DNA of 64,000 nt from positions 1,364,001 to 1,428,000 of the forward strand of contig NW_026782366.1 in the NCBI RefSeq assembly GCF_031769215.1. The letters run 5' to 3'. The position numbers and the translations under genes were made by a program. Below the pieces are notes generated by a model. It was not told the origin of the DNA, did not search any database, and saw nothing but the letters and a program-made list of their open reading frames with translations. This DNA comes from Ylistrum balloti. Lineage: Eukaryota. Shown piece by piece: positions 51,287 to 61,214 of this stretch (positions within the stretch are counted from its first letter, which is position 1; the number at the start of each line of letters is the position of its first letter).

Positions 51287-54200
51287 TCACTGTACAGAAG
51301 CTAAATAGTCTTTGACCTCTGCTGGTGATAATCTTTTAAAGCCATCCTGATTACAGATTCCGATCTCAATATTATCTTCCGTCATTTGTCCTTCAAAACT
51401 TTCTTTCAAGGTCAAAATAGCTGTATGGACGGCATCTTCTAACTCAAGATTATCACTGTACCTAAAGGTGAAATTAAAATACTTGATAAATGTGTTTAAT
51501 CTTAAAAACATATGAGTTATGCAATACATCATGATCAGTGTGTTTAATTTGTAAAACACATGAGTTATGCAATACATCACAGTCAGTGTGTTTAATTTGA
51601 ACAAGAGATCCACTGGCCTTCATTGCTCACATTGTATTTCATGTTAATCGAAAATGGAGTTGTTGACATCATGAAAACATTACCCTACACCATTAGCATT
51701 CAAAGTAGGCACACCTAATCAATTTTAACCAATTTCCACAACAAACAGCTTCTAATACTCAACTCTAAACTGCGATAGTTATGATCTGGATTATTGGTAA
51801 GTGTCACTTCTTTTTTTTTCTTGAAATTTGTCAGGCTTTGACTTAGAAACACCTTTCCACCAAATATCTTGCTTTTTGGACTTTCGCTTCACCAGAAAAA
51901 GCCTGTCATTGGTTTTAATTTTGACCCCTGTGACCTTGAATATGGTTCAAGGTAATTCATTTTTCGCAAACTTTGTCAGGCTTCATCCCAGATACCTACA
52001 AGCCAAACATCAGGCTTTTGTGCATTTTGGTTAGTCAGAAGTAGTTGTTTAAATGTTTAAACAAATTTGACTTTGTGACCATGAATATGAGTTAAGGTCA
52101 TTTTTCTGCAAACATTGTCAGGCTTCAGCCTAGGAATCTATTTGCCAAATAGCATGCTTCTGGGACTTCTGGATTGGTCAGAAGAAGTCATTCAAAAGAT
52201 TTTTAAAAAAAAAAGCATCCTCTGTGACCTTGAATAAGGGTCATTTCTTTCGCAAACTTTATCAGGCTTCATCCTAGGAGTCTATGAGCCAAATATCATC
52301 CTTCTGTTCCTAGGAACCAAATACCATGCTAATTAGTCTTCTGGTTTTCAATGGAAGTTGTTTTGAGATTTCAAGAAATCTGACTCATCTTGGTTCATCA
52401 GAAGAAGTTATTCAAAGGTCTTACAAATTTGACCCCTGTGACCTTGAACATGGGTCAAGGTTATTTTTTTGTAAGGCTTCCTTCTAGGAATCTATAAGTC
52501 AAATACCATGACATCTGGTCTGTTTGTTAGTGAGAAGATGTTGATGGACAGATAGATGCCAGACACACAACAGACAGACAACAGATGATGCATCATGGCA
52601 TTAGCCCATCAGGCCAGGTGAACTAAAACACATGATTATAATATACATCATAATCACTGTGTTTGATTTGTACAACAGATGAGTTATCAAACAAATATAT
52701 ATTAACATATTGTTGCTAAAGAATTAAAAAAAGAAATGCATGCATACAACTGGTTATGGACAACTAATGATTCCTTCCAAATAGAGATAAAATCTACATT
52801 CAGGAGAAGATACAGATTATGTTTAATATGGTCTAAGTACAAGGTAATAGATCTCCTTGGTGAAGAAAATTAAAAGAATTTCTGAACTATCCATTGAAAT
52901 AGATTAATTCACATTTAATGGGATAAAATAATGGAATAAAAATGTGACATAGTAAAATCAAAAAGATTGGGTTGGGGGTGGATGGGTGTTGGGGATTTTA
53001 AGCCATAAAACACCAAAGATTTCAATTGTGAATTGCAATTCTAATAGTACACCTTCCCAGATGTATAATTGACATGATTCTATTGCATTTATATAGGAAC
53101 ACAATAAACATTGATGTTATAATATTTTTTACAGCCATCTGTTGCTCAATTATCAGAAAAAGGCATAACTTTGATAAGAGCATCAATTAGATTATTACTG
53201 CGATTTCTCTAGTGCCTCTTCATCAACAAACGCTTCTGTGTATTTTCATTCAAGAGGATGACAAGAACAATCAATTGCAATGCTGCCTCATTTTGAAAAT
53301 TTACAACTGCAACTTGATCAGTTTCTGACAATATGATCTCAAGACCAACCACAATGTTGATATGTCTTTTGAAGCTTACATATTAAGAAAATCAAACTGA
53401 AGGCAGACCCTTTACATTCTTCTGCCGTTACAGGCTACCTCTTACCTCCTCTACTAATTAAATCCTTAAAACATTAAGGACATTGGATGAGATAATTTAC
53501 CTTTTCTCTAAAAATGTCTTTCCATTCACATGATTCTTTCCAATGGCAGTAGCTTTCCAAGCAAAATATGCTCCCTGCAATAAAACAGTACCAGGAATAA
53601 CAAATATGTGGATGGAAGCAATGATAATACACACGAATAACAATTAGAAAATGTCTTGATAACTCATGAAAGCCCTACTTCTATCCGAACCAAAATCTTA
53701 CCAAAGTTTTATAAAAGATTTCTGATATTTGTCTGCCATAATTTTCTTTGATCTGCCAATAAATCTTAACATAAAAAAAATGCAATAAAAATTTGCAATC
53801 AACTAAAAGCCACTGGGAATATAACAGTATATAAAACTTTGAGAAAAAAGCCATCATTTTGCTCTTTAACTAAGAGCAAGATCAAAAGGAACCCAAATGG
53901 AATTTAAGAAAATTGTACTAAAAAATTCAGAAATTATCAATAAAGTTTATATCTGTCAACCCGTTAGGTTAAACTATATATATAACTAAGGACAAAAAGA
54001 GAGAGTGATTTACAAGTGGACCAAGGCTCAAAGAGAAAAAGTGACTTGTACACATTAAAAGGAGCATATCAGCTTGTAATTGGTCAGTTTGTTACTCGTA
54101 GTACCAATCAAATTACTTAGTTTGGGGCTTAAGTTTTGCCATGACACAATCCAGGGGTGCAGAGAGCAAAAGTAGTCATAAACCCTAGAGTAGCAGAAAG

Positions 54201-60200: not shown

Positions 60201-61214
60201 GCGGCAAAATATCCAAACAGATATAGTATCTTGTTTACATTGTGGGGGTTTCCACAAAAGAAACACAATATGTGGTGAGAAATTTATTTTCTTTATTCAT
60301 ATGTAGGTATATAATTCTTATGCAAATGAAATTTTAATTTTGAATGCTGCCCCAGTTGATCAAAGCTTGGTTAGAATTACATTTGGATAGTGAAAAAGTG
60401 AAATTATTGCCTCTGAAAAATAAGGACATTCAAAGTAGGATTTGCACTCAAAAGATGTTAATCTGACTTGTCTCATCAAATCTATAGACGTGAAATTAAA
60501 GGATAAAGAAAGTTTCTAATTTTGTTCAATTCAGATTAAAATCTTTTCACTAGTTTAACTCAAAGCAATCTTGAAGCAAGTAGACACGTTCTTATTTCAG
60601 AAATCATTGACCCCAAAAATGTATATCAAGTTATCTTTATTCATTAACATCATGATCAAGATGAAAAATGCATAGAACCAAGGAAATTCAATCTGATGGA
60701 CACTAATATCTGTCTCTTTCTCTTTGATCAGCATACTAGTGGGTCTTTAATTTTTTTTAAGTCTAGTTTGAATTTTTTAAGTTTTCGCTGGAATCTATGA
60801 AGATTAAGTCTGAAAATTATACAGTTTACAAGTATGGGTAAATAAGTGTTACACACTGCTGTCCCTTTTGACTTTTTGTTACATTTGTTTTCTTTTGCAC
60901 TGTTATTATTTGCCAGTAGATTGTAACGAAGTGTCATCATTGTGGTGTATTAAATGATTTTCATTTGATATCTTATTATTGCAGGTACTTGCTACGACAT
61001 GGTACGAAAGGAGACCCAAGAAATGATGAAAAAAATCGGCGACCATCTTGAGTATGATTCACCACATTCAGAATTGGCGGTAATATATGAAGGGGAAGAA
61101 GAAGAACGGGAAAAATTACATGATAAATTTATTGTACAAATGGACAAACCTAGACCAAAATGGTTTTCAGATTTCATCGATGCTAAAAACAAAAGGAGTT
61201 GGTCAGATTCATGA
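57245..61214 (+). CDS. MRPL32: Mitochondrial ribosomal protein L32 (bL32m), 195 aa
   Basis: Exons 57245-57335, 60008-60274 and 60985-61214 splice in frame. Arg-rich segment, zinc motif CLHCGGFHKRNTICGTCY, then DMVRKET and C-terminal DKPRPKWF, matching human CPECG..HVLCAYCY..VCKET and RPSWF (from recall). Basic, acid-poor N-terminal presequence. Confidence 0.95.

What the first reader, a model, noticed from the sequence alone, without database searches (positions are those of the whole stretch)
51287..61214. PSMA2 and MRPL32 are head-to-head, as in human: possible pre-bilaterian-split gene pair
Seen: divergent PSMA2 (ATG 57120) and MRPL32 (ATG 57245) only 124 bp apart. Known: human PSMA2 and MRPL32 are adjacent and head-to-head on chromosome 7p. 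Inference: the same pair in an apparent protostome suggests the linkage predates the protostome/deuterostome split and is held by a shared promoter that couples a proteasome subunit to a mitoribosome subunit. It may already appear in published microsynteny lists.
Basis: partly seen in the sequence, partly recalled or inferred. Interest (0 to 1): 0.75.

Follow-up and report, generated by a model that had tools for sequence, protein, structure and literature searches.

The report
Ancient PSMA2–MRPL32 head-to-head gene pair
In this scallop genome a proteasome gene (PSMA2) and a mitochondrial-ribosome gene (MRPL32) start back to back 124 bases apart, as they do in octopus, sea urchin, acorn worm, amphioxus and vertebrates, so the pairing dates to early bilaterian animals; it is a further example of a well-known kind of conserved gene pair.

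Summary
A 7-exon PSMA2 gene lies on the minus strand (ATG 57120, stop 51287). A 3-exon MRPL32 (bL32m) gene lies on the plus strand (ATG 57245, stop 61214). The two ATGs are 124 bp apart. The PSMA2 model is 235/235 identical to RefSeq PSMA2 of the scallop Ylistrum balloti, so the window is from that species or a very close relative.

I found the same divergent pair, with ATG-to-ATG gaps of 99-247 bp, in two Octopus species, amphioxus, Saccoglossus and Strongylocentrotus. Published tables list it for seven vertebrates. It is absent within 10 kb in a tick, two cnidarians and a sponge. A 2010 table does not list it for Ciona, insects, Daphnia or C. elegans. The linkage therefore predates the protostome/deuterostome split, was lost several times, and has no support outside Bilateria.

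A shared promoter is inferred, not shown. The evidence is the tiny spacer and a single CpG-undepleted island between two CpG-depleted gene bodies. No RNA run was available. Nothing supports a specific proteasome-mitoribosome coupling, and no promoter motif is shared between phyla.

This scan has noted other ancient head-to-head pairs in the same genome (KDM3-REEP, Ena-SRP9). I rate it a new member of a known kind, of modest interest.

The parts
51287..57120 (-). PSMA2 (20S proteasome subunit alpha type-2) coding region, 7 exons, 235 aa
   Evidence: Spliced model with GT-AG introns throughout. Exons hit Pfam Proteasome_A_N and Proteasome in collinear order. The last exon hits only alpha type-2 chains in the PDB at E 2e-26. 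The product is 235/235 identical to Ylistrum balloti XP_060077235.1.
57121..57244 (.). 124-bp spacer between the two start codons; inferred bidirectional core promoter
   Evidence: Measured. Contains a palindromic double CCAAT box, ATTGGCCAAT, at 57166-57175 (its only occurrence in the window; 0.17 expected) and a further CCAAT at about 57199. It has 5 CpGs and GC 0.40. Promoter function is inferred, not measured.
57241..57249 (+). CAAGATGGC around the MRPL32 start codon (YY1-like core, or simply Kozak context plus an Ala codon)
   Evidence: Only occurrence in the window, against 0.27 expected. The same core surrounds the MRPL32 ATG in amphioxus (CAAGATGGCGAC) and Saccoglossus (CAAGATGGCGGC), but not in Octopus. 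The PSMA2 ATGs of these species also sit in CAA[A/G]ATG, so the motif cannot be told apart from translation context.
56700..57999 (.). Single CpG-undepleted island straddling both start codons
   Evidence: CpG o/e is 0.92 here, against 0.18 in the PSMA2 body and 0.32 in the MRPL32 body. The same single peak is centred on the pair in both Octopus species, amphioxus and Saccoglossus.
57245..61214 (+). MRPL32 (mitochondrial large-subunit ribosomal protein bL32m) coding region, 3 exons, 195 aa
   Evidence: Spliced model. 75% identical without gaps to Pecten maximus MRPL32-like, which passes the Pfam Ribosomal_L32p cut-off. A profile of the relatives hits bL32m of solved mitoribosomes at E 1e-30. 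An HMM of the relatives scores exon 2 at 2e-32 and exon 3 at 1e-30. The CxxC...CxxC zinc ribbon is split by intron 2.
58268..58747 (.). 480-bp high-copy repeat inserted in MRPL32 intron 1, absent from the other haplotype or individual
   Evidence: Contig 1 of run X1 skips exactly 58268-58747. Contig word depth there reaches about 4400, against about 10.5 elsewhere, and many joints on opposite strands fall there.

Best explanation
Two single-copy, essential housekeeping genes, PSMA2 and MRPL32, are transcribed in opposite directions from one very short promoter region in the scallop Ylistrum balloti. [quoted passage not shown] It has been kept in slowly rearranging lineages: molluscs, hemichordates, echinoderms, amphioxus and vertebrates. 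The most likely reason is that 99-247 bp between the start codons leaves no room for two separate promoters. Any breakpoint between the genes would remove promoter elements from at least one essential gene. The pair is therefore held by cis-regulatory entanglement, not by a need to couple the two proteins' functions. Co-expression is expected as a by-product. Shown here: gene identity, orthology, geometry and phylogenetic distribution. Inferred: shared promoter use, and selection against breakpoints.
For: Gene models and the 124-bp spacer. Orthology of PSMA2 and of MRPL32. A Ribosomal_L32p gene lies immediately upstream of PSMA2 and divergent from it, with these ATG-to-ATG gaps: 229 bp in Octopus vulgaris and O. 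bimaculoides, 247 bp in Branchiostoma, 236 bp in Saccoglossus and 99 bp in S. purpuratus. The ATGs were verified, and tblastn and HMM hits fall inside those genes. The MRPL32 N-termini are alike across phyla (MAT[NS]...), so the start codons are homologous. Seven vertebrates are listed as a divergent pair less than 1 kb apart in PMC2871058 Table S5. The human pair is listed with TSS distance -23 in PMC3815023. One CpG-undepleted island sits between two CpG-depleted gene bodies in scallop, Octopus, amphioxus and Saccoglossus. Irimia et al. 2012 (PMC3514665) report that most conserved ancient microsyntenic pairs are 5'-5' oriented and enriched for spacers under 1 kb.
Against: No transcript data exist for this locus: no RNA run holds it. 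TSS positions, promoter sharing and co-expression are therefore untested. The spacer sequences share no motif across phyla: CCAAT boxes occur only in the scallop. The pair is missing within 10 kb in a tick, two cnidarians and a sponge. It is not listed for Ciona, C. elegans, insects or Daphnia in the 2010 table. Separation is therefore tolerated. Only one ecdysozoan locus was examined directly, and the Capitella locus is an assembly gap.
Confidence: 0.8

Rival explanations
1. Adaptive functional coupling. The pair is retained because co-regulating a proteasome core subunit with a mitoribosomal protein is itself advantageous, for example by matching proteolytic capacity to mitochondrial translation.
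For: Retention in at least five phyla with a very short spacer. The 2010 human table gives 0.41 in one column of the pair's row, which may be a similarity or expression measure; I did not read the column header. In Sepia larvae both genes are among the down-regulated hub genes after stress, but so are many other proteasome and mitoribosome genes.
Against: The other proteasome and mitoribosome subunit genes are not linked in this way. The pair has been lost repeatedly in viable lineages. No regulatory motif is conserved across phyla. The Sepia result reflects class-wide regulation, not pair-specific regulation.
Confidence: 0.08
2. Passive persistence. The pair survives only because a 100-250 bp spacer is a very small target for breakpoints in slowly rearranging genomes, with no selection acting on the linkage.
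For: All lineages that keep the pair are known for conservative genome organisation. Lineages known for heavy rearrangement (tunicates, nematodes, insects) lack it in the 2010 table.
Against: Irimia et al. found only about 800 conserved groups among many thousands of adjacent pairs, with a strong excess of 5'-5' orientation. That excess argues for constraint rather than target size alone. In practice this rival differs from the best explanation only in degree.
Confidence: 0.1
3. Independent, convergent assembly of the pair in molluscs and in deuterostomes.
For: None found, apart from absence in the single tick examined and in the ecdysozoans of the 2010 table.
Against: The same two orthologues, in the same divergent orientation, with similar spacers and homologous MRPL32 N-terminal exons, occur in six invertebrate genomes. 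Chance adjacency of two specified genes among some 20,000 is of the order of 1e-4 per lineage.
Confidence: 0.02

Closest known systems
Vertebrate PSMA2/MRPL32 divergent pair (human 7p14; listed in Davila-Lopez et al. 2010, Table S5, and in the human divergently-paired-gene list of PMC3815023)
   Same: The same two orthologues, head-to-head, with a spacer far below 1 kb (human 134 nt intergenic, or TSS distance -23; scallop 124 bp ATG to ATG).
   Different: The published listings cover vertebrates only. Here the pair is shown in a bivalve, two cephalopods, a hemichordate, an echinoderm and amphioxus. The spacer sequences are unrelated.
Conserved ancient microsyntenic pairs (CAMPs) of Irimia et al. 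2012, coregulation class, e.g. HSPE1-HSPD1
   Same: A non-paralogous pair of housekeeping genes in 5'-5' orientation with a spacer under 1 kb, conserved across bilaterian phyla.
   Different: HSPE1-HSPD1 encode partners in one complex and reach back to Capsaspora and fungi. PSMA2 and MRPL32 work in different compartments, and the pair was not found outside Bilateria. I could not check whether this pair is in their supplementary list, because the supplements are not held.
Other head-to-head pairs noted by this scan in the same genome (KDM3-REEP, Ena-SRP9)
   Same: Invertebrate copies of vertebrate divergent pairs on short promoters.
   Different: Different genes. Those notes were not tested here.

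Membership tests
Proteasome subunit alpha type-2 (PSMA2 orthologue) | Proteasome_A_N signature followed by the Proteasome (T1) domain, with no beta-type propeptide or catalytic Thr1 | tested here: met
   Exons hit PF10584 and then PF00227 positions 14-188 in collinear order. The N-terminus [18 protein letters not shown] is the alpha-subunit signature.
Proteasome subunit alpha type-2 (PSMA2 orthologue) | Closest to alpha-2 rather than to the other six alpha paralogues | tested here: met
   The last exon hits alpha type-2 chains of animals, plants, protists and yeast (2e-26 to 7e-8), then archaeal alpha. No other eukaryotic alpha type reaches E 0.01. The product is 100% identical to RefSeq PSMA2 of Ylistrum balloti and 86% identical to a frog PSMA2.
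bL32m / MRPL32 | Ribosomal_L32p domain with a CxxC...CxxC zinc ribbon | tested here: met
   Exon 2 alone reaches only E 0.91 because intron 2 splits the domain. The 75%-identical Pecten orthologue passes the Pfam cut-off (23.1 against 21.3 bits), as do nine more distant relatives. C106, C109 and C119 are invariant in the alignment, and the window protein reads CLHCGG...CGTC.
bL32m / MRPL32 | Mitochondrial type: N-terminal extension and the C-terminal extension ending in a RPxWF motif, matching bL32m of solved mitoribosomes | tested here: met
   A profile of the relatives aligns to pig, human and mouse bL32m over positions 10-180 at E 1e-30 to 5e-27, including the C-terminal KPRPxWF. The window protein has KPRPKWF. 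Mitochondrial import itself was not tested.
Bidirectional promoter pair (divergent genes less than 1 kb apart sharing a promoter) | Divergent orientation with 5' ends less than 1 kb apart | tested here: met
   124 bp between the ATGs. The TSSs must lie in or beyond this spacer.
Bidirectional promoter pair (divergent genes less than 1 kb apart sharing a promoter) | Mapped TSSs and correlated transcription from the shared region | not testable with these tools
   No RNA run holds the locus. The only run available is made of DNA contigs.
Conserved ancient microsyntenic pair (bilaterian) | Orthologous adjacency in both protostomes and deuterostomes with orientation conserved | tested here: met
   Scallop and two Octopus species against amphioxus, Saccoglossus, S. 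purpuratus and vertebrates.
Conserved ancient microsyntenic pair (pre-bilaterian, metazoan) | Adjacency in cnidarians, sponges or other non-bilaterians | tested here: not met
   In Nematostella the upstream neighbour is a RabGAP-TBC gene. In Dendronephthya it is a DNA_pol_A_exo1 gene. In Corticium nothing is called, and no L32 was found by HMM in any of the three. Only about 10 kb on each side was examined.

The most novel reading that the evidence does not exclude
The PSMA2-MRPL32 divergent promoter is a roughly 550-million-year-old regulatory unit whose retention reflects selected co-regulation of proteasome assembly and mitochondrial translation. On this reading the MRPL32 start codon sits in a conserved YY1-type element (CAAGATGGC in scallop, amphioxus and Saccoglossus) that sets the output of both genes.
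Probability: 0.08. Interest if true: 0.55.

Novelty: new member of a known kind. Interest (0 to 1): 0.3.

Why it matters
The result adds one well-documented case to the set of head-to-head housekeeping gene pairs that have survived since the bilaterian ancestor. It dates the pair as present in the protostome-deuterostome ancestor, with no sign of it in cnidarians or a sponge. It also maps several independent losses. Such pairs are useful markers for ancestral gene order. They are also natural experiments on how promoter sequence can turn over completely while promoter architecture stays fixed. It does not open a new question: the vertebrate pair and the general phenomenon are both published.

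Tried and rejected
1. A word-based protein search with MRPL32 exon 2 found nothing, because of the length filter. I used the exhaustive representative search instead.
2. Look-up of a partial Acropora PSMA2 was not on record.
3. In an unnamed ENA eukaryote (L001), the last-exon fragment belongs to a PSMA2 gene longer than the 10-kb flank, so its 5' side was not reached.
4. Capitella: nothing is called upstream, but 8,786 of the 10,000 upstream bases are N. I count it as uninformative, not as a loss.
5. The horseshoe-crab look-up returned an intronless copy of PSMA2, probably a retrocopy, which is uninformative for synteny.
6. Extended synteny: kinase genes lie beyond MRPL32 in both amphioxus and Saccoglossus, but they are not alike. 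tblastx found no hit, the Saccoglossus tail looks CDK-like, and the amphioxus gene looks like a TGF-beta receptor.
7. Conserved promoter motifs: CCAAT boxes occur only in the scallop. The YY1-like core at the MRPL32 ATG cannot be separated from Kozak context plus an Ala codon.
8. Rfam found no RNA gene in 50000-64000.
9. Literature: the supplements of Irimia 2012 are not held. The pair is not named in the held supplements of PMC8851819 or PMC9023564. Those catalogues may use orthogroup identifiers or blocks of three or more genes, so a blank means little.
10. The spliced proteins have no reference in the tools, so they were used only inside scripts and were never typed into search tools.
11. 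No human sequence was fetched or compared. Statements about human rest on the cited papers.
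Full report
**What is in the window**

The region is eukaryotic, AT-rich (GC about 0.34) and intron-bearing.

On the minus strand I assembled a 7-exon coding model:
- Exons are 57120-57083, 56469-56393, 56101-55969, 54818-54696, 54321-54234, 53574-53501 and 51461-51287.
- Every intron is GT-AG, and the product is 235 aa beginning [18 protein letters not shown].
- The exons hit Pfam Proteasome_A_N and then Proteasome in collinear order.
- The last exon hits only 'proteasome subunit alpha type-2' chains among eukaryotic proteasome subunits in the PDB, best E 2e-26.

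On the plus strand a 3-exon model (57245-57335, 60008-60274, 60985-61214; GT-AG) gives a 195-aa protein. It carries a CxxC...CxxC zinc ribbon split by the second intron and ends in KPRPKWF.

The two start codons are separated by 57121-57244, which is 124 bp.

**Whose genome, and are the genes the orthologues claimed?**

A word search seeded from a stop-free reference, followed by a second search from a 182-aa fragment, returned named full-length PSMA2 proteins from many phyla. The window's PSMA2 model is 235/235 identical to XP_060077235.1 of the scallop Ylistrum balloti. It is 98.7% identical to Mizuhopecten and 97.9% to Pecten. Ylistrum balloti is a pectinid bivalve, a protostome.

MRPL32 needed more work:
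- Exon 2 alone scores only E 0.91 against Ribosomal_L32p, finds nothing in the PDB and finds nothing in the word search.
- The exhaustive representative search gave 23 relatives. All ten of these that I scanned pass the Pfam cut-off for Ribosomal_L32p.
- The best relative is XP_033732051.1, '39S ribosomal protein L32, mitochondrial-like [Pecten maximus]'. It is 75% identical to my model without a gap over all 195 residues.
- A profile of these relatives aligns with bL32m of solved pig, human and mouse mitoribosomes over almost the full length at E about 1e-30, including the C-terminal RPxWF.

In animals the L32p family is represented by the mitochondrial protein; this is established knowledge (the cytosolic eL32 is unrelated). 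Both identities hold, and paralogy is not a concern.

**Is the adjacency real?**

A contig of 8,562 bases from another public DNA data set differs from the window at about 1.4% of positions. It runs from PSMA2 exon 2 through the spacer and MRPL32 exon 1 to MRPL32 exon 2. In Pecten maximus the two proteins carry neighbouring RefSeq numbers on the same 55-Mb chromosome. That is consistent with adjacency there, but I did not read that locus.

**Survey of other animals**

I used the twelve locus look-ups on PSMA2 proteins of chosen taxa. The loci are oriented with PSMA2 on the plus strand. The ranges given are coding ranges: the first base is the PSMA2 ATG in every case, and the upstream gene's end is an ATG on the other strand.

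A gene whose product hits Ribosomal_L32p lies immediately upstream and divergent in five genomes:

| Species | ATG-to-ATG gap |
|---|---|
| Octopus vulgaris | 229 bp |
| O. bimaculoides | 229 bp |
| Branchiostoma | 247 bp |
| Saccoglossus kowalevskii | 236 bp |
| Strongylocentrotus purpuratus | 99 bp |

- tblastn with the scallop MRPL32 hits inside those genes.
- An HMM built from the MRPL32 relatives also hits inside them, at E 1e-13 to 2e-26.
- The HMM hits nowhere else in any locus.
- The N-termini are alike (scallop MATNTSIMQRL, amphioxus MATSLLRIF, urchin MATSMLRNM, Saccoglossus MAARMLAM), so the first exons are homologous too.

No L32 gene lies within 10 kb of PSMA2 in four genomes:
- Nematostella: the upstream neighbour is a RabGAP-TBC gene.
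- The octocoral Dendronephthya: a 3'-5' exonuclease gene lies head-to-head instead.
- The sponge Corticium.
- The tick Ornithodoros.

These upstream stretches contain no or almost no N, and the HMM finds nothing in them.

Three loci are uninformative:
- Capitella: 88% of the upstream flank is an assembly gap, which I left as it is.
- The horseshoe-crab hit is an intronless copy.
- An unnamed ENA eukaryote has a PSMA2 gene too long for the flank.

**Literature**

- Davila-Lopez et al. 2010 (PMC2871058), Table S5, lists human PSMA2/MRPL32 among divergent pairs less than 1 kb apart (134 nt). It records the pair as conserved in zebrafish, chicken, stickleback, mouse, medaka and Xenopus.
- Their data set also held Ciona, C. 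elegans, Brugia, three dipterans, Daphnia, Nematostella and part of Trichoplax, but no spiralian, echinoderm, hemichordate or amphioxus. None of those invertebrates is listed for the pair.
- The human list of divergently paired genes in PMC3815023 gives the pair a TSS distance of -23.
- PMC8709867 shows the order HECW1-MRPL32-PSMA2-C7orf25 conserved in birds and mammals.
- Irimia et al. 2012 (PMC3514665) describe about 800 conserved ancient microsyntenic groups. Most are 5'-5' oriented and enriched for spacers under 1 kb, which the authors interpret as coregulation through bidirectional promoters. Their supplementary list is not held, so I cannot say whether this pair is in it.
- Two later catalogues do not name the genes in the supplements that are held.

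**Reading of the distribution**

The pair is present, in the same orientation, in Mollusca (two classes), Hemichordata, Echinodermata, Cephalochordata and Vertebrata. This places it in the protostome-deuterostome ancestor. Convergence of two specified genes into the same divergent arrangement is negligible.

The pair was then lost at least once in the ecdysozoans sampled and once in tunicates. For the tunicate, insect, Daphnia and C. elegans losses I rely on the 2010 table, where absence could also be an annotation or clustering failure.

Two cnidarians and a sponge lack it. The pair may have arisen on the bilaterian stem, or it may be older and have been lost in those lineages. With three non-bilaterians sampled, the first option is the simpler one.

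**How it probably works**

This part is inferred.
- The spacer is too short for two independent promoters.
- Both gene bodies are strongly CpG-depleted (o/e 0.18 and 0.32). In molluscs this is the usual mark of germline-methylated housekeeping gene bodies (established knowledge).
- A single 1.3-kb stretch, 56700-57999, centred on the two start codons, is not depleted (o/e 0.92).
- The same single peak lies over the pair in both Octopus species, amphioxus and Saccoglossus. It is less clear in the urchin.
- This fits one unmethylated, shared promoter region.
- The scallop spacer holds a palindromic double CCAAT box, ATTGGCCAAT, and a further CCAAT. CCAAT/NF-Y sites are typical of mammalian bidirectional promoters; that is my own knowledge and was not tested here.
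- None of the other five spacers has a CCAAT box.
- The MRPL32 ATG lies in CAAGATGGC, the core of the YY1 site as I recall it. This is the only such 9-mer in the window. Amphioxus and Saccoglossus have the same core.
- However, the PSMA2 ATGs of these species sit in CAA[A/G]ATG as well. Translation context plus an alanine codon explains the motif equally well.

The architecture is therefore conserved while the sequence is not.

No RNA run holds this locus. TSSs and co-expression remain untested.

The evolutionary inference is right, and it is now supported by direct evidence from five further invertebrate genomes.

The mechanistic clause, that a shared promoter couples a proteasome subunit to a mitoribosome subunit, is only half supported. 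A shared promoter is likely. A selected functional coupling is not indicated. The simpler reading is that two essential genes with entangled promoters cannot easily be pulled apart, and that fast-rearranging lineages nevertheless managed it.

In Sepia larvae both genes fall together with many other proteasome and mitoribosome genes after stress. That shows class-wide regulation, not pair-specific regulation.

**Novelty and score**

The vertebrate pair and the phenomenon of ancient head-to-head pairs are both published. The extension of this particular pair to molluscs, ambulacrarians and amphioxus was not found in the literature I could search, but it may sit in an unsearchable supplement.

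The scan has noted comparable pairs elsewhere in this genome (KDM3-REEP, Ena-SRP9), which underlines that this is one of a class.

I rate it a new member of a known kind, interest 0.3.

Noticed in passing
window 58268-58747: A 480-bp element in MRPL32 intron 1 is absent from the other haplotype or individual (contig 1 of run X1 skips exactly this stretch). It belongs to a very high-copy repeat: contig word depth is up to about 4400 against about 10.5 elsewhere, and many joints on opposite strands suggest inverted ends. It is probably a recently mobile MITE- or SINE-like insertion.
   Followed up: partly
window 31325-34241 (minus): Three consecutive long ORFs of a LINE-type retrotransposon: an endonuclease-like part (weak Exo_endo_phos_2 hit), a reverse transcriptase (RVT_1, E 6e-27), and a 378-aa C-terminal part with no Pfam hit. 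They are split by frame breaks, so the copy is probably decayed.
   Followed up: partly
window 42022-42429 (plus): A lysine-rich exon that ends with the start of an RRM domain (RRM_1, E 1.5e-4). It belongs to an RNA-binding protein gene on the 3' side of PSMA2, which was not identified further. It does not look like C7orf25, the human neighbour of PSMA2.
   Followed up: no
window about 1-12800 (minus), e.g. 8022-8477: Exons of a xanthine dehydrogenase / aldehyde oxidase family gene (MoCoBD_1, E 4e-14). Another first-stage note on this window already covers it (s1-268617).
   Followed up: no
L009:10001-10708: An intronless, full-length, intact copy of PSMA2 in a horseshoe-crab assembly (GCA_004210375.1), with no called neighbour within 9 kb. 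It is probably a retrocopy with an open frame.
   Followed up: no
L012:8679-9611 and L008:2492-9440: In the two cnidarians PSMA2 is also head-to-head with a close neighbour, but a different one in each: a DNA_pol_A_exo1 exonuclease gene 389 bp away in Dendronephthya, and a RabGAP-TBC gene 560 bp away in Nematostella. PSMA2 seems prone to sharing its promoter region with whatever lies upstream.
   Followed up: no
L002/L003 9772-10000: The Octopus spacer is extremely AT-rich (GC 0.19) and has TATA-like runs, quite unlike the scallop spacer (GC 0.40, with CCAAT boxes). It still lies within a CpG-undepleted island.
   Followed up: partly
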